NCBI RefSeq assembly: GCF_963853765.1
Contig: NC_088860.1
Location: 37,138,001 to 37,202,000 of the forward strand
Length of the DNA stretch: 64,000 bases
Reading direction: 5' to 3'
Source: Magallana gigas
Taxonomy: Eukaryota
A program made the translations under genes and the position numbers. Shown here piece by piece: positions 31,143 through 52,480 of this stretch; position 1 is the first letter of the stretch; every line of letters starts with the position of its first letter. The notes below the pieces were generated by a model. The model searched no databases. It saw only the letters and a list, made by a program, of their open reading frames with translations, and was not told where the DNA came from.

Positions 31143-31202
31143 TTTATTCAACCTCGGGCGTCTATTTACAAATGAGAGATGTGAATTTATAGTTGCGTCT
31201 TC
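31143..31202 (-). other. Gene A non-coding last exon with AGACGCCCG motif and AATAAA
   Basis: Donor ACAG|GTAATT at 31510/31509, 25 nt after the stop. Acceptor TTTTCAG|G at 31203/31202. Motif 31163-31155, AATAAA 31148-31143. Confidence 0.7.
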
Positions 31203-31534
31203 CTGAAAATAATAAAAAAAATTATATAATTTATAATTCGTCATAAAAATGAAATACAGTGGCAAAGATATTTGAAACTTTTACTTTGAGGTTTTACCGG
31301 ATGTGAAAACAGTTTTGAGTATAACCATAGTTTTTTTTAGATAAAATTTAAATTAGTTAATATTGTCAACCATATATTACTTGAAAAAAAAAAAATAAAA
31401 GTGTAATATTATTTTTAATTTGATATGAGACACCTCCCTTTTTCCGTTTTGCTTAACCAAGTCCTACATCTTTGTATTATATGCTTTTACTCCATGTTAA
31501 CATAATTACCTGTCTAACGACCAGTGCACCAGAC

Positions 31535-32836
31535 TTATTGGTAGGTGGTCACTGTGGGAGGGTAGTTGACTACCCTGGTGGTGAACTGACGACGCGGAAG
31601 ATACCTAATCCTTCGTTGAACAGACGAGTACCCGGGTAGAGTGTAAGTACTCCTGTAGCGCCTCATATATCCTAGGCCACCGTCAAGACCATAGTCATCG
31701 GAATAACCTGCCCCAGCGCTAGAAAGACCGGAGTAAGGTGTTGTATCGACAAAGGAACTGGTAGCCGAGAAGCCGGACCCTAGGGCACCGTCTAATCCTA
31801 TACCAGCACCAGCACCAGCACCAAGCTCGGCGGATGAGAATCGTCTGTTGTATAAGTCGGTGTATGTGGGAGATGTCGACTGATAGGACGCATAGACGGA
31901 AGATCTACCTCCTGTTGAAAGGGGTCCGTAGTAGGTACTTGGATAGATAGAAGAACTTCCTGTCAGTAGAGAACCCGATGAAGCTGAAAACCCACCATCT
32001 AGACCACCGAAATCACCAAACCCAGTCCCGCGGGGTCCATTAATATAGCTTTCATCATATAATCGATCTACTCCAAGTCCAGCAGTCGAGAGACCTGATC
32101 CACCGATTTCGACTCCAGCGGTTCCAAAGCCACTTAGTCCAGATCCACTTAGCCCAGTATCATATGGCCCCGGTCCATCTAATTCAGGTCCATAGGGTCC
32201 GGATCCACCATCTGGCCCTAGACCATAGGGTCCAGGTCCGTCTCTTGGTCCATAGGGTCCGGAGCCACCATCTGGCCCTAGACCATAGGGTCCCGGTCCG
32301 TCTCCTGGTACATAGGGTCCGGATCCACCATCTGGCCCCAGACCATAGGGTCCAGGTCCGTCTCCTGGTCCATAGGGCCCAGGTCCATATGGTCCGGGTC
32401 CATCTCCTATAGGTCCTAGATCATAGGGTCCAGGTCCGCCTGTTTCAGGCCCATATGGCCCCGGAAACGAAGTAGAGCCTACAAGGGGAACGGCTGCATC
32501 TGGTAAATCGGATGTATCCACACCGCCGTACAATTCCTCGTAAGTAATAGATGGCCTCCCAGTAGCTACAGAGCTTCTGACGAAGGTATTGTCCAGACCC
32601 AGAGAGGAGTCCCCACCGATACCGTAGAAGCGCCTGCTCAATGTTGTGGATGTTAAGGCCCCGACGTCATGGACCGAGTACACTCGGATGCCTCGGGCTC
32701 TTAGTATTCTGGCCACAATATCCGAGTATTGATTGTGATAACGGGGGATGAAGCGTGTCCCCAAGTTGATGACCTCGGGAGGGTTGCCGCAAACCGACGC
32801 TACTAGGAGTAGCACACAGAACCACAGTAACGACAT
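31535..32836 (-). CDS. Secreted Gly/Pro/Tyr/Asp-rich silk-like repetitive protein (gene A), 433 aa; putative shell-matrix or other extracellular structural protein
   Basis: ATG directly after acceptor TTTTCTCTCTTCAG (32837). Signal peptide MSLLWFCVLLLVASVCG, GPGPYG repeats, Arg/Tyr-rich C-terminus. The extra 30 N-terminal codons in the ORF track are intronic. Confidence 0.85.
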   Translation of the reverse strand: MSLLWFCVLLLVASVCGNPPEVINLGTRFIPRYHNQYSDIVARILRARGIRVYSVHDVGALTSTTLSRRFYGIGGDSSLGLDNTFVRSSVATGRPSITYEELYGGVDTSDLPDAAVPLVGSTSFPGPYGPETGGPGPYDLGPIGDGPGPYGPGPYGPGDGPGPYGLGPDGGSGPYVPGDGPGPYGLGPDGGSGPYGPRDGPGPYGLGPDGGSGPYGPELDGPGPYDTGLSGSGLSGFGTAGVEIGGSGLSTAGLGVDRLYDESYINGPRGTGFGDFGGLDGGFSASSGSLLTGSSSIYPSTYYGPLSTGGRSSVYASYQSTSPTYTDLYNRRFSSAELGAGAGAGIGLDGALGSGFSATSSFVDTTPYSGLSSAGAGYSDDYGLDGGLGYMRRYRSTYTLPGYSSVQRRIRYLPRRQFTTRVVNYPPTVTTYQ

Positions 32837-34252
32837 CTGAAGAGAGAAAATGTTAGTGAAATTACAAAGGGTTTTATAGCATATCCAGTGATAACAGACA
32901 ACAGTCTCGAACCCTTCCATCCCCATTTCTTTCTAGAATATGAAAAGGTGTCTGAGTGCATTGTTTGTCATGGGTATATATTGTTTTCCTTAATTCCTTC
33001 ATATCTTATCATGTACACATCAGCTTTTGCATTAAGGTCCACCAAATCTATTCATTGGAAGGAAAGGGTCACAAACCAGACTGAAAGTTACTGTTACAAG
33101 GTGTGCAAAATTATCGATTATGCCTGTATTATAATAAATAACGATCCAAGCTATCAAATCAGAATATGTCATATAGTTACTCACTCTTGTTTTAAAATTG
33201 TTAAAGGCATGGTAGATTTTCTATAATTTATTTAATTTATTGTGTAAAAAGGGGCATCTTTCATATGTTAAAGGATTATCATCCTTTTGAAATATATCAA
33301 ACTACATGTATATATCATATGTACAAATCAACTAATATAGCTGGATGGAAGACTGTCCGTCAAAGTTTAAAGTTAAAGCAGATCATGCAATTATTTTCAT
33401 CAAACTCTAGAAAAGCTTCATCAACACATTTATAAACAAAACGTGAGGTACTCGATCGTGTTTTCTTGATAAGGCAAAATAAAAGATTGTAGCAAATTTT
33501 AAAATGCTTCTATTTATCAAAAGAAACATATTTTACATCCATGTATAAACATGGTGCCCCAGCAAAATTCATTTTTCAGAGACAATCAGAAAAATGTTAA
33601 ATCAAGATAATTAATATTTCTCAATTATTATAAAGCAAATCGTGACTTAATTTATCGCTGAACTACCAATTGGGGAGGGGATTTAGCCGCCGAATTCTCA
33701 CTATTTTTTTTGGGGGGGGGGAGGGCTAGCGATCAGATATGAAATCCGTTGATAATACAACTTACAAATAATGTTTTCTTATAAACGAAGGTAAATTGCA
33801 TGTAATGTACGTCACGTCGAACACGCTTACGGAAAACTATGTCACGTGATATACACGTGGCACATACGAGTAACATTGTAAAAGGTTAACAGTATTTTAA
33901 AAGGCTTCCATATATGGGGCGATGCTTAACGTCTGCAGAGATGGAATGTAAGCAGTGTAACCCCAATCATAAATAACTTTTTTTAATCTCCCATGAAAAT
34001 GATTTTTCATGTGGAAGGAAAGGGAATCTATAAGAATGCATATATCAAAAGTTAGGTACACACAGACTAAAAAGAGAAATTCCGAAATTTATAAATATTT
34101 TTTTTTCCATTTTTACTGGGGGCCCTATGTCACTCCATCCTTATAGTTACTTATTGATATCATAATTCAAAATTTTAGTTACTTATACTGCAGTCGATAA
34201 ATGAAGCGTTGTAATACGGAATCTTAGGAAATATATTTGTGTAAAAACTTAC

Positions 34253-50616: not shown

Positions 50617-50989
50617 CTGAAAGATATTTAAAAAAACAAAACACTGAGTATTTCGAATGTTCCGTCACAGCAACGAAAAATCTTGAGTGTTTTTTCTTTG
50701 CTTGATATTTCAGAAAATATGTAATGATGTAAATTATTCCATCAAATTTTGACAAATTTAACTTGTGAATTGATATTTTTCCTAATTCCTATCTTAAAAA
50801 AACTAAAAATCAACTTATCAAGTCGTTATTTATTTCTATCCTATAGAAAACCCCTAATATCATTGAAACTGAAGAAAAAAATATAGCAAAGTCTTATAAT
50901 GATGGACTTTTAATTTTACTTTAAGTTGTTACCTAAGGGATTAAAAATTATTGTAAACTAGGTTACGTGCTAGGGGGCATGGCTATCCG

Positions 50990-52057
50990 CTAGTCAAACC
51001 CAGGGCTTCCAACGGAACCGGCAGAGTCGCCGTCAAAACCGGAAACCCCCACATTATTAAAATTGTATTCTAGGTAGCGTCCTGGAGAGCTCAGTGGTTC
51101 TGCTAGTCCGGCACTTCCGGTTCCGCGACCTCGAGACCCTTGTCCTTCCAATGCACTAAACTGAGTGTTGAAGCTTAGTCCATCTCCACCTTGAAGGTTG
51201 AAGTCCAACCCAGGGCTTCCAACGGAACCGGGAAAGTCGCCGTCAAAACCGGAAACCCCAGTCCTAGAAGAACTGCTGAATCCAGATGACGAGAATCGAT
51301 CGCCAAGATCGAAGCGTCCGTCTAAATCATCATACGGATTAGGATAAAGAGATGATGATCCGTCCAATCCAAGGTAGGGTTCATAGACTGAGCCTGCACC
51401 GCTACGTCCAAGGCTGTCTTCATAGTCATATCCTATTGACCCGGATCTTCTTGAAAAGAAACCGCCTGAAAATTGTCCACCCCTTAAAGCCCTGATACCA
51501 TCAAAACTTCCGCTACCGGTAAGTACATCGTCATCATAATATAGTCTGTCATCAGTAAGAGGTCCGTCTCCGTTCAGGGATCCGAAGCCGTCAGTACTGG
51601 GACCATCTAAAGGTCCTCCAGGATAAGGATCGACACCATCTCCGCGACCTAAACCTCTACCAGGTCCAAACCCAGACAAAGGTCCATCAAAATCATAAGG
51701 TCCATCATCAGGCACATAAGGTAATCTGCCAAATTCATTGTAGGTTTGGAATCCACCAGAGAATGGCGCTACTGTTCTAATTGTAGTGCTTCTCCTGGTG
51801 TAGGGATACACGGAACTCAACCCGATGCTTCGTCCTCCGGTAACACCACCGGCCAGGAAAGTAGAACCAAAAGTACGGCTCAGGGAGGATCCGGAAATGC
51901 TGCCGAAGCGGCTGAGGGTATCCCTGTTGTATCCCGCGTAAACTGGGGCGAGGATTCCCGTTATTCCTAAATTGATGAATCTTGGGCCTCTGTACCTAGT
52001 TCCTTGAACTGAGGCTACGACGACTGCCGCTAAAAGTGCAAAGACAAGTCCTCGCAT
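50990..52057 (-). CDS. Secreted Gly/Asp/Ser-rich silk-like protein (gene C), 355 aa, inverted paralog of gene B
   Basis: Acceptor TAG at 52069, signal peptide MRGLVFALLAAVVVASVQG. N-terminal ~125 aa and C-terminal block nearly identical to gene B. Confidence 0.88.
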   Translation of the reverse strand: MRGLVFALLAAVVVASVQGTRYRGPRFINLGITGILAPVYAGYNRDTLSRFGSISGSSLSRTFGSTFLAGGVTGGRSIGLSSVYPYTRRSTTIRTVAPFSGGFQTYNEFGRLPYVPDDGPYDFDGPLSGFGPGRGLGRGDGVDPYPGGPLDGPSTDGFGSLNGDGPLTDDRLYYDDDVLTGSGSFDGIRALRGGQFSGGFFSRRSGSIGYDYEDSLGRSGAGSVYEPYLGLDGSSSLYPNPYDDLDGRFDLGDRFSSSGFSSSSRTGVSGFDGDFPGSVGSPGLDFNLQGGDGLSFNTQFSALEGQGSRGRGTGSAGLAEPLSSPGRYLEYNFNNVGVSGFDGDSAGSVGSPGFD

Positions 52058-52430
52058 TGTGATGGACCCTAGAATTACAGAAAAGTCTAAATCTATTCAT
52101 AACGTTTTTAATTGATATTTATAACGTTTTATAAACATCAGTTTGTTGAGTAACGATAATGTCATGTGTTTCTCCGAGGAAGGTTAAATTACAAATAATT
52201 CTCAATTATAAAGTTAGTTTTATGAAAATAAACTGTTCTCTAAAATTATAAGAAATCAGAATTTACTCTTCCAAACGAAAGGGTAGATTTGGTAAAACAA
52301 AAGTTTCAGACATCTTTTTATCTATAGGAACAATATAATCTAAGTTGTTTTCATAATATATAAAACAAAATTAAGATTATCTGAGTTTGTTTCTTACACT
52401 TTTGTGTTCATTTAAGTCGTCTTCTCTTAC

Positions 52431-52480
52431 CTTGTGAACGAGCACCCGGGACTTCAGAAGCACAAATGCTAATTTTTCGT
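52431..52480 (-). other. Gene C non-coding exon 1 (3' part)
   Basis: TACGAAAAATTAGCATTTGT..CCCGGG..GTTCACAAG|GTAAGA, homologous to gene B exon 1. Confidence 0.75.

What the first reader, a model, noticed from the sequence alone, without database searches (positions are those of the whole stretch)
31143..52480. Three-gene cluster of secreted silk-like proteins forming one family with a shared N-terminal domain
Seen: A (-), B (+) and C (-) all encode a signal peptide, an Arg-rich N-terminal region and a Gly/Pro/Asp/Tyr repeat core. Even the divergent A aligns to B/C by motifs in the same order: EVINLG / RFINLG, STTLSRRF / GSSLSRTF, TYEELYGG / SYNEFGG. A and B are divergent across a shared upstream region of about 4.5 kb; B and C are convergent. 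Known: oyster and pearl-oyster shell, ligament and cement matrices are rich in lineage-specific repetitive low-complexity secreted proteins (shematrins, prisilkin, Shelk). I do not recognise this INLG family. Inference: a co-regulated, possibly undescribed extracellular material module.
Basis: partly seen in the sequence, partly recalled or inferred. Interest (0 to 1): 0.8.

Follow-up and report, generated by a model that had tools for sequence, protein, structure and literature searches.

The report
Oyster Shelk1 silk-like gene cluster
Three neighbouring oyster genes encode secreted, disordered, silk-like proteins; one is the already named shell protein Shelk1, and the other two belong to an unstudied sister family that has sat beside it since before the main oyster genera split.

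Summary
The three genes are real. A (-, 433 aa), B (+, 413 aa) and C (-, 355 aa) each have a signal peptide and one coding exon. The mature proteins are acidic, Gly/Ser/Pro/Asp/Tyr-rich and lack Cys, Lys and Trp.

B and C are clear paralogues (E 6e-130). A is not an unknown protein. It is the orthologue of Crassostrea nippona Shelk1 (61% identity, full length) and of C. gigas RefSeq "spidroin-2-like precursor". A published C. nippona shell proteome lists Shelk1-annotated models in the prismatic layer only.

The claimed shared ~110-aa N-terminal domain is weak by sequence: BLASTP E 0.17, and hhalign finds only PRVINLGTR/PRFINLGIT. An exhaustive profile search with the B/C N-terminus recovers no Shelk1.

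Common ancestry is still likely, on other evidence. Both families share one gene plan: an intron ending 0-11 nt before the ATG, one coding exon, an intron starting 1-56 nt after the stop, and a short last exon carrying AGACGCCCGRGG just before the poly(A) signal. That 12-mer occurs 11 times in the 564-Mb genome, three of them here. The tandem pair between TACC and FGGY is conserved in Saccostrea echinata, and the two genes are also tandem in C. virginica.

B is a Magallana-lineage inverted extra copy; it is transcribed and spliced. Tissue expression and co-regulation remain untested.

The parts
34305..34341 (-). Putative core promoter of gene A: a GGGCGTGGCT box followed by TATATAAAA
   Evidence: This is the best-scoring upstream block conserved with the Saccostrea cucullata Shelk1-like locus, at a similar distance from the ATG (84% over 37 nt, E 2e-4; the other matches were weaker, E 0.008 or more). 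Its function is inferred.
34252..34290 (-). Gene A non-coding exon 1 (inferred), with a GGG|GTAAGT donor at about 34251
   Evidence: The position follows from the TATA box and a conserved donor seen in both species. No reads were laid here.
31510..32836 (-). Gene A (Shelk1 orthologue) coding exon. The CDS is 31535-32836 (433 aa) and the splice acceptor lies directly before the ATG
   Evidence: ORF; acceptor ...tcttcag|ATG; 61% identity over the full length to C. nippona Shelk1 and 97% to the cluster that holds C. gigas NP_001292256.1.
31203..31509 (-). Gene A 3'UTR intron (GT..AG), starting 25 nt after the stop codon
   Evidence: Read from the sequence. The same layout is present in the S. cucullata, S. 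echinata and C. virginica orthologues. Inferred, with no reads.
31120..31202 (-). Gene A last exon, with AGACGCCCGAGG (31152-31163) and AATAAA (31143-31148)
38620..38832 (+). Gene B non-coding first exon(s). One donor lies at 38665|38666 and is used by the K1QRW6 model. A second donor at 38832|38833 is homologous to the exon 1 donor of C
   Evidence: The P0042/K1QRW6 N-terminus matches 38620-38665. BLASTN aligns B 38765-38849 with C 52489-52414.
40992..42245 (+). Gene B coding exon. The CDS is 41003-42244 (413 aa) and the exon ends 1 nt after the TAA stop
   Evidence: ORF; acceptor. RNA contigs and strand-specific poly(A) reads cover 40991-42254, with every first mate on the - strand.
42246..43701 (+). 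Gene B 3'UTR intron (1456 nt, GT..AG)
   Evidence: The joint 42243>43700 (cut +2) is seen in 25 raw reads with 19 distinct starts and in contigs of two RNA runs.
43702..43850 (+). Gene B last exon, with AGACGCCCGGGG (43802-43813) and ATTAAA (43823-43828)
52431..52500 (-). Gene C non-coding exon 1 with a CACAAG|GTAAGA donor. This exon and promoter block is conserved in Saccostrea and Ostrea
   Evidence: tblastx matches from L006 and L007 fall on window 52437-52546.
50933..52068 (-). Gene C coding exon. The CDS is 50990-52057 (355 aa; C. gigas LOC105319237) and the acceptor lies 11 nt before the ATG
   Evidence: ORF. The exact protein sits in one cluster with XP_034329509.1 and K1PZS0. E 6e-130 against B.
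50617..50932 (-). Gene C 3'UTR intron (inferred). Its donor TTAG|GTAACA is homologous to the read-verified donor of B
   Evidence: No reads were laid here.
50470..50616 (-). Gene C last exon, with AGACGCCCGGGG (50506-50517) and ATTAAA
60760..62260 (+). TACC-family gene exons: the flanking marker next to C, conserved next to the B-like gene in S. echinata and O. edulis
27377..27481 (.). FGGY carbohydrate-kinase exon: the flanking marker next to A, conserved next to the Shelk1-like gene in S. cucullata and S. echinata

Best explanation
The window holds a conserved oyster (Ostreidae) locus, lying between an FGGY kinase gene and a TACC gene, that encodes secreted silk-like structural proteins. Gene A is the orthologue of Shelk1. 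Gene C is the positional orthologue of an uncharacterised sister family (LOC105319237 type) found in Crassostrea, Saccostrea and Ostrea. Gene B is an inverted extra copy of C that arose in the gigas (Magallana) lineage; it is intact, transcribed and spliced. The two families are most likely ancient tandem paralogues. The proteins have no detectable folded domain and contain no Cys, Lys or Trp. Each has a short conserved handle, PR[VF]I[ND]LG, at the mature N-terminus, an Arg-rich end region, and an acidic Gly/Pro/Asp/Tyr core; in A and B this core is made of GPY-type turn repeats. Inferred mechanism: mantle epithelium secretes them into the shell-forming space, where they act as framework proteins of the prismatic layer. 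The proline-glycine-tyrosine repeats would give an extensible network that can be cross-linked through tyrosine. The aspartate-rich core would bind calcium or mineral, and the arginine-rich ends would dock onto acidic partners. The shared 3'UTR 12-mer beside the poly(A) signal probably gives the module a common post-transcriptional control. Shown here: gene structures, paralogy of B and C, orthology of A to Shelk1, synteny, transcription of B, and the published prismatic-layer listing of Shelk1-annotated models in C. nippona. Inferred: the A-B/C paralogy, the material mechanism, and the role of the 12-mer.
For: A is 61% identical over 100% of its length to C. nippona Shelk1 (E 1.6e-168) and 97% identical to the cluster holding NP_001292256.1/BAL41653.1. 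B against C gives E 6e-130. The B/C N-terminal profile finds orthologues in O. edulis and S. echinata. Nine genes in five species share one plan: an acceptor 0-11 nt before the ATG, one coding exon, a GGTAA donor 1-56 nt after the stop (shown explicitly for six of them), and a last exon with AGACGCCCGRGG 8-12 nt before the poly(A) signal. That 12-mer occurs only 11 times in 564 Mb against 10 for the control pattern, and three of the 11 are in these genes. Both families share PR[VF]I[ND]LG at mature residues 3-9 or 6-12, and there is weak collinear similarity further in. Synteny: S. echinata has TACC, B-like, 19 kb, Shelk1-like, FGGY; C. virginica has B-like, 8.8 kb, Shelk1-like. Strand-specific poly(A) reads cover B, and its 3'UTR intron joint is seen in 25 reads. 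For B against C, dN/dS is 0.25-0.35 over the N-terminal 120 codons. In the C. nippona shell proteome, two models annotated Shelk1 (CNI_020649 and CNI_020651) and CNI_020652 are listed as prismatic-layer only and signal-peptide positive (PMC10543319 Table S10). CNI_020649 is close to Shelk1 in mass and pI.
Against: Sequence statistics alone do not establish A-B/C homology: BLASTP on the N-termini gives E 0.17, hhalign gives probability 3-30%, and an exhaustive hmmsearch with the B/C N-terminal profile found no Shelk1-like protein at E <= 0.001. Full-length profile scores are driven by the GP repeats and are inconsistent across orthologues. No tissue information could be obtained. Only B was checked with reads. 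I could not verify that the C. nippona models CNI_020651 and CNI_020652 correspond to B and C. No Shelk1-like gene was seen within 10 kb of the O. edulis B-like gene. AlphaFold2 gave no confident fold for the A N-terminus (pLDDT 44.5), so no structural support is available.
Confidence: 0.7

Rival explanations
1. A (Shelk1) and B/C are unrelated low-complexity secreted proteins that merely lie side by side. On this view the INLG motif and the similar composition are convergent or due to chance.
For: BLASTP on the N-termini gives E 0.17. hhalign matches only 9 columns, P 0.014. The exhaustive profile search does not link the families. Their promoter blocks differ: A has GGGCGTGGCT plus a TATA box, while B and C have CGAAAAATTAGCATTTG.
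Against: Both families have the same unusual three-exon plan, with introns hugging the start and stop codons. The same 12-mer precedes the poly(A) signal in all nine genes examined, and it occurs only 11 times in the genome. The tandem adjacency is conserved in two further species, S. echinata and C. virginica. The same motif sits at the same mature-N-terminal position, with the same N/D variation in both families. The B-profile shuffle tests reach p <= 0.001 for A.
Confidence: 0.12
2. The proteins are structural, but they act in a material other than calcified shell: periostracum, hinge ligament, larval or adult cement, or a mucous coat.
For: Nothing in the sequence is specific to mineral. 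Gly/Pro/Tyr elastomer-like repeats also occur in ligament and byssal proteins (general knowledge). No tissue data were available here. [quoted passage not shown]
Against: Two Shelk1-annotated models and a near-neighbouring model by number were identified in cleaned prismatic-layer shell of C. nippona and not in the foliated or chalky layers. The name Shelk comes from a shell-matrix screen (Takahashi et al. 2012, cited in PMC4944945; I could not read the paper itself).
Confidence: 0.2
3. B is a decaying duplicate without a function of its own.
For: The exact B protein is absent from the 15-billion-sequence collection. Its only database model is a 185-aa mis-spliced prediction, K1QRW6. Outside the N-terminus, B and C have diverged to 72-74% nucleotide identity with many indels.
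Against: B has an intact 413-aa ORF. Word depth across the exon is high in three RNA runs (about 570-2100). Splicing is correct and coverage is strand-specific. dN/dS is below 1. B retains the tandem repeats that C has lost.
Confidence: 0.05

Closest known systems
[quoted passage not shown]
   Same: Gene A is its orthologue. It has the same length, signal peptide, NPP[RE]VINLGTRFIP...ARILR.RG N-terminus, GPGPY repeat core and basic Tyr/Arg C-terminus, with 61% identity over the full length. B and C share with it the gene plan, the 3'UTR 12-mer, the INLG handle and the genomic neighbourhood.
   Different: B and C are not retrievable as Shelk1 relatives by sequence search. They lack the ~20-aa YSD[IL]VARILR.RG[IL]RVYSV segment and the basic C-terminus, and have a basic N-terminus instead.
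Shelk2 (poly-alanine silk-like shell matrix protein of the Pacific oyster; Takahashi et al. 2012, Gene 499:130)
   Same: It is also a secreted, repetitive, 'silk-like' oyster shell protein. It is described as expressed in the mantle edge (title cited in PMC4944945) and as a poly-Ala protein (PMC6542584).
   Different: A, B and C have no poly-Ala blocks; Ala is not among the nine most frequent residues in any of them. I had no Shelk2 sequence, so homology was not tested.
Shematrins, silkmapin and other 'flagelliform silk-like' Gly/Tyr-rich framework proteins of pearl oysters and freshwater mussels
   Same: They are secreted, repetitive, low-complexity, insoluble framework proteins of shell layers. 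The literature treats them as silk-like by composition, not by homology (10.1101/2022.09.07.507049).
   Different: They have different repeat chemistry and are basic, Gly/Tyr-rich proteins (my own knowledge). The proteins here are acidic, Pro- and Asp-rich and Lys-free. No sequence link appeared in any search.
Spider flagelliform and MaSp2 spidroins
   Same: They contain Gly-Pro-Gly-x / GPGxY turn repeats, which in spiders give extensibility (established knowledge). This is the source of the database names.
   Different: Neither a spidroin N-terminal nor a C-terminal domain is present: Pfam finds no family at all at E <= 1. The proteins are about ten times shorter, and they come from an animal phylum with independently evolved silk-like proteins.

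Membership tests
Shelk1 orthologue group | Full-length sequence similarity to C. nippona Shelk1 (BAM72053.1) | tested here: met
   Gene A: E 1.6e-168, 61% identity, 100% coverage. It shares a 90% cluster representative with NP_001292256.1/BAL41653.1.
Shelk1 orthologue group | The same similarity, tested for genes B and C | tested here: not met
   No Shelk1-like protein appears among the B hits or in the exhaustive profile search at E <= 0.001. BLASTP on the N-termini gives E 0.17.
Shelk1 orthologue group | Position next to the FGGY kinase gene | tested here: met
   The window FGGY exon at 27377-27481 matches the gene beside the S. cucullata and S. echinata Shelk1-like genes.
Shelk1 orthologue group | Presence in the shell matrix | not testable with these tools
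   Only published data for C. nippona are available: two models annotated Shelk1, including CNI_020649, are listed as prismatic layer only, and CNI_020649 is close to Shelk1 in mass and pI.
LOC105319237-type ('B/C') family | N-terminus [HT]RYRGPRFI[ND]LGI[TV]G...SSVYP...SGG.Q.Y after the signal peptide | tested here: met
   B and C align with the C. virginica, O. edulis and S. echinata members; 31 columns are invariant. Profile hits range from E 1e-16 to 1e-52.
LOC105319237-type ('B/C') family | Position next to the TACC gene | tested here: met
   Met for C. B lies between C and A as an inverted extra copy.
Proposed Shelk1 + B/C superfamily | Three-exon plan with only exon 2 coding, and introns within 0-11 nt of the ATG and 1-56 nt of the stop | tested here: met
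   Shown for six genes in four species. The B 3' intron is verified by reads; the other splice sites are read from the sequence.
Proposed Shelk1 + B/C superfamily | AGACGCCCGRGG 8-12 nt upstream of the poly(A) signal in the last exon | tested here: met
   All nine genes have it. The genome-wide count is 11.
Proposed Shelk1 + B/C superfamily | Statistically significant protein homology between the two families | tested here: inconclusive
   hhalign P 0.014-0.0005, probability 3-30%. HMM shuffle tests give 0/1000 for A, 2-23/1000 for three orthologues and no signal for one. Collinear BLASTP segments between P0044 and P0022 give E 0.026 and 0.076.
Spidroins (spider silk proteins) | Spidroin N-terminal and C-terminal domains | tested here: not met
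   The Pfam scan of A, B and C found no family at E <= 1.
Shelk2 / MSI60-type poly-Ala silk-like proteins | Poly-alanine blocks | tested here: not met
   Composition and sequence inspection show no Ala run longer than alternating AGAGAG in A. No Shelk2 sequence was available for a homology test.

The most novel reading that the evidence does not exclude
Shelk1 and the uncharacterised B/C genes form one ancient, oyster-specific gene module. Its members have kept a dedicated linear 3'UTR element, AGACGCCCGRGG, placed 8-12 nt before the poly(A) signal, together with a mature-N-terminal PR[VF]I[ND]LG handle, across at least three genera. The 3'UTR element would be the binding site of a factor that coordinates 3'-end processing, stability or apical localisation of shell-framework mRNAs. 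The peptide handle would be a docking or processing signal for assembly in the prismatic layer.
Probability: 0.4. Interest if true: 0.6.

Novelty: new member of a known kind. Interest (0 to 1): 0.4.

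Why it matters
Oyster shell framework proteins are mostly lineage-specific and low-complexity, and they are hard to relate to one another. Here a named but barely studied shell protein, Shelk1, gains a sister family, a conserved genomic address and a shared gene plan. That combination gives a way to define families of low-complexity matrix proteins when sequence statistics fail. 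The locus also offers a compact, testable cis-element in the 3'UTR for how a shell-matrix module might be co-controlled. There is a practical point for proteomics too. All three proteins lack Lys and have Arg-free stretches of 44-111 residues, so only 27-67% of their residues fall in tryptic peptides of usable size. Trypsin-based shell proteomes may therefore under-report them. This is an incremental result, not a surprising one: the kind of protein and one of the three genes were already known.

Tried and rejected
- **Pfam scan** of A, B and C: nothing found.
- **Full-length HMM cross-searches with window-shuffled decoys**: the scores were dominated by the GP repeats and inconsistent between orthologues, so I do not count them as evidence of homology.
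- **AlphaFold2 of the A-family N-terminus**: pLDDT 44.5, so no fold search was run and the second job was not used.
- **Genome-wide scan for a back-translated PR[VF]I[ND]LG pattern**: 9 hits against 11 for the control. Only B and C are real, and the one other exact PRFINLG lies in no ORF. There are no hidden paralogues.
- **Own-genome protein searches with both N-termini**: only A, B and C.
- **RNAalifold on the nine 3'-end sequences**: no conserved pairing, so the 12-mer is a linear motif.
- **The bacterial promoter/terminator scan** is not applicable to an animal genome, and I ignore it.
- **L005, the Logan contig for A**, turned out to be genomic rather than a transcript, so A's exon 1 rests on conservation only.
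- **Literature searches** for LOC, XP, UniProt and CGI identifiers found nothing in main texts. The Takahashi 2012 paper is not held.
- **CGI_10002595**, the 'spidroin like glycine-rich' gene induced at metamorphosis, could not be mapped to this locus.
- **The K1QRW6 185-aa model of B**, which uses an internal donor at about 41471 joined to 43702, has no supporting joint in the four runs laid. I take it to be a gene-prediction artefact.
All coding regions are single exons, so no joined spliced model was needed.

Full report
**1. What is in the sequence**

The window is G000:C8:37138001-37202000 of a 564-Mb, 29-contig oyster assembly. The proteins are identical or 97% identical to Crassostrea (Magallana) gigas entries.

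- Between 31 and 53 kb there are exactly three long ORFs: A at 31535-32926 (-), B at 40982-42244 (+) and C at 50990-52057 (-).
- They are the only ORFs over 300 aa in the 64 kb.
- They sit in GC-richer islands (0.41-0.44 against about 0.31-0.35 around them).
- The true start codons are at 32836, 41003 and 52057, because a splice acceptor lies 0, 11 and 11 nt upstream of them.
- The products are 433, 413 and 355 aa.

Each product begins with a hydrophobic leader that ends VCG|N or VQG|[HT]. I judged this by eye, as no signal-peptide predictor was available.

The mature proteins are 35-42 kDa and acidic (pI 4.25-4.68). Gly makes up 21-27% and Ser 10-14%, with abundant Pro, Asp, Tyr and Leu. None contains any Cys, Lys or Trp.

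- A carries a 60-nt (20-aa) GPGPY-type unit repeated 3.2 times at 93% identity.
- B carries two 18-nt arrays (GPYDGI and GDGP[FL]G types).
- C has no tandem repeat and a single GPY.

**2. Relationships between the three**

B and C are unambiguous paralogues (BLASTP E 6e-130). Their first 416 coding nucleotides are 90% identical. The C-terminal coding part, the first exon and the last exon are only 72-74% identical, with many indels. Over the N-terminal 120 codons dS is 0.17-0.23 and dN/dS is 0.25-0.35.

A against B gives E 1e-6 over the full length, but most of that score comes from the GP-rich repeats. The tests on the N-terminus alone are weak:

- With the N-terminal ~117-120 residues alone, BLASTP gives E 0.17.
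- Profile-profile comparison of five A-type and six or seven B-type N-termini aligns only the signal-peptide end plus PRVINLGTR/PRFINLGIT. Probability is 30% with the leader and 3% (P 0.014) without it.
- A HMMER profile of the B-type mature N-terminus scores A at 11.2 bits, which 0 of 1000 shuffles reach. Three A orthologues are reached by 2-23 of 1000 shuffles, and one (P0020) is at chance (432 of 1000).
- The signal survives removal of the INLG motif. It comes from a collinear stretch of the form TLSR..SSL..STF[LV]..GG.S[IL]..[LV]Y.G.
- An exhaustive hmmsearch of 1.84 billion representatives with the B/C N-terminal profile returned only B-type proteins and a few spurious repeat proteins. 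No Shelk1-type protein appeared at E <= 0.001.

**3. Identity of A**

[quoted passage not shown] The 97%-identical cluster contains C. gigas NP_001292256.1/BAL41653.1 'spidroin-2-like precursor' and C. angulata XP_052705289.1.

[quoted passage not shown] All share NPPRVI[ND]LGTRF[IV]P..NQYS.[IL]VARILR.RG.

**4. Identity of B and C**

C is C. gigas LOC105319237 (XP_034329508-10, K1PZS0) and C. angulata LOC128181077.

The exact B protein is not in the 15-billion-sequence collection. Its only database trace is K1QRW6, a 185-aa model that joins an internal donor to the true last exon.

Relatives are C. virginica XP_022345740/2, O. edulis LOC125658528 and S. echinata LOC133192285. All are unnamed or misnamed.

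**5. Evidence for common ancestry beyond the protein alignment**

(a) Gene plan. In A, B and C, and in the S. echinata, O. edulis and S. cucullata genes, four features recur:
- a non-coding first exon;
- an acceptor 0-11 nt before the ATG;
- a single coding exon;
- a GGTAA donor 1-56 nt after the stop, followed by a short last exon.

For B the 3'UTR intron (42246-43701) is verified by 25 raw poly(A) RNA reads with 19 distinct starts and by contigs of two RNA runs.

(b) A shared element. AGACGCCCG occurs exactly once, on the right strand, in the last exon of each of A, B and C. The same holds for each orthologue examined: S. echinata B-like and Shelk1-like, O. edulis B-like, S. cucullata Shelk1-like, and both C. 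virginica genes.
- It is always followed by [AG]GG and, 8-12 nt later, by AATAAA or ATTAAA.
- The 12-mer AGACGCCCGRGG occurs only 11 times in the whole 564-Mb genome (reversed control 10). Three of the 11 are here, and the other eight have unrelated contexts.
- No conserved RNA pairing is predicted.
I confirm both and extend them to four other species.

(c) Synteny.
- In S. echinata the order is TACC(-), B-like(+), 19 kb, Shelk1-like(+), FGGY(-), on overlapping loci with no other called gene.
- In C. virginica the B-like gene lies 8.8 kb upstream of the Shelk1-like gene on the same strand.
- In O. edulis the B-like gene also abuts TACC.
- Read in reverse, the window gives TACC, C, B (inverted), A, FGGY.

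The ancestral state is therefore a head-to-tail pair, as expected from a tandem duplication. B is a later inverted copy of C in the gigas lineage.

(d) The PR[VF]I[ND]LG handle sits at mature residues 3-9 (A type) or 6-12 (B type) in every member, and both families show the same N/D alternation. A back-translated genome scan shows it is not a common peptide. There were 9 DNA hits against 11 for the control; only B and C are genuine, and the one other exact PRFINLG lies in no ORF.

Taken together, I put the probability that the two families are paralogues at about 0.8-0.85.

**6. Expression and function**

B is transcribed from the + strand. In a stranded poly(A) run all first mates lie on the - strand across 40.9-42.25 kb and on the last exon. 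Three further RNA runs hold contigs with word depths of roughly 570-2100 across the exon.

The reads also show in-frame length variants in the repeats: 54 nt skipped at 42009-42064, and a 74-for-11 nt replacement at 41946-42021.

Run and sample names were coded, so tissue could not be read.

The published C. nippona shell proteomes (Bai et al. 2023, PMC10543319, Additional file 2, Table S10) list three relevant models as present in the prismatic layer only, each with a signal peptide:
- CNI_020649-RA, annotated Shelk1, 45.06 kDa, pI 6.52;
- CNI_020651-RB, annotated Shelk1, 47.2 kDa, pI 4.92;
- CNI_020652-RA, 'PE_PGRS46-like', 46.7 kDa, pI 4.68.

GenBank Shelk1 computes to 44.86 kDa and pI 6.18, so CNI_020649 is very probably Shelk1. 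The other two are near neighbours by gene number and could be the B and C counterparts, but I could not verify that.

No open paper discusses Shelk1 in its text. The only citable description of the Shelk name is Takahashi et al. 2012 on Shelk2, which I could not read.

**7. Mechanism (inferred)**

These are secreted, disordered framework proteins. AlphaFold2 finds no fold in the A N-terminus (pLDDT 44.5) and Pfam finds nothing.
- By analogy with spider flagelliform/MaSp2 GPGxx repeats and other elastomeric proteins (established knowledge), the GPGPY/GPYDG repeats should form turn-rich, extensible chains.
- The 6-9% Tyr offers cross-linking by the tyrosinases and peroxidases that accompany Shelk1 in the prismatic-layer list.
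- The Asp-rich core (pI 4.05) can bind calcium or calcite.
- The Arg-rich ends can dock to acidic matrix components. These ends are the N-terminus in B and C (pI about 10.6-10.9) and the C-terminus in A (pI 10.1).

None of this was tested.

**8. Verdict**

'Unrecognised' and 'undescribed' are wrong for A.

What is new is modest: a sister family of Shelk1, a lineage-specific expressed third copy that current annotation mis-models, a conserved locus, and a shared 3'UTR element.

I class it as a new member of a known kind (silk-like oyster shell matrix proteins), with interest 0.4.

Noticed in passing
window 31152-31163 (-), 43802-43813 (+), 50506-50517 (-); L006:11697, L007:11874, L008:11793, L029:2124 and 11432, L030:11665: AGACGCCCGRGG lies 8-12 nt before the poly(A) signal in all nine genes of both families in five species. 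It occurs only 11 times in the 564-Mb genome. It is a linear motif with no conserved pairing. Within each family the 50 nt around it are also strongly conserved across genera.
   Followed up: yes
window 39694-40087: A stretch inside B's first intron has very high RNA word depth and raw reads on both strands. There are many loose ends at 39762, 40000, 40027 and 40078, and some 'goes back' joints. It looks like a transcribed dispersed repeat or mobile element, not part of gene B.
   Followed up: no
window 41946-42064: RNA reads show in-frame length variants of B's C-terminal repeat region: 54 nt skipped in 7 reads, and 74 nt replaced by 11 nt in reads and in one contig. This points to allelic repeat-number polymorphism.
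   Followed up: partly
window about 41471 joined to 43702: UniProt K1QRW6 (185 aa) models B with an internal donor spliced to the true last exon, which removes most of the protein. No such joint appears in the four RNA runs laid, so it is probably a prediction artefact. The full 413-aa B protein is absent from the public protein collection searched.
   Followed up: partly
window 34305-34341 (-) and L008:8332-8367: A conserved GAGGGCGTGGCT box followed by a TATA box lies about 1.5 kb upstream of the Shelk1 ATG in both Crassostrea and Saccostrea. The B/C-type genes instead conserve CGAAAAATTAGCATTTG before their first exon (38770-38800 and 52455-52475).
   Followed up: partly
window 50992-51049 versus 41978-42089: C's last 19 codons (VGVSGFDGD...) are an extra copy of an internal repeat that B lacks at this position. 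As a result C's stop lies 57 nt before the shared 3' donor, whereas B's lies 1 nt before it.
   Followed up: partly
G000:C4:28000012, 28039986, 28055772: Three of the eight other genome copies of the 12-mer lie within 56 kb on another chromosome, inside near-identical flanks. This is a local repeat or duplicated gene, with no poly(A) signal after the motif, and appears unrelated to this family.
   Followed up: partly
window 47684-47746: A perfect (AG)31 microsatellite lies in the B-C intergenic region.
   Followed up: no
P0048 and cluster (Logan, 151 aa): A short, Cys-containing, degenerate B-type N-terminus (HRYRGQRFIDLGIKG...) is seen in several Logan contigs. It is possibly a decayed extra copy in an Ostrea-like species.
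   Followed up: no
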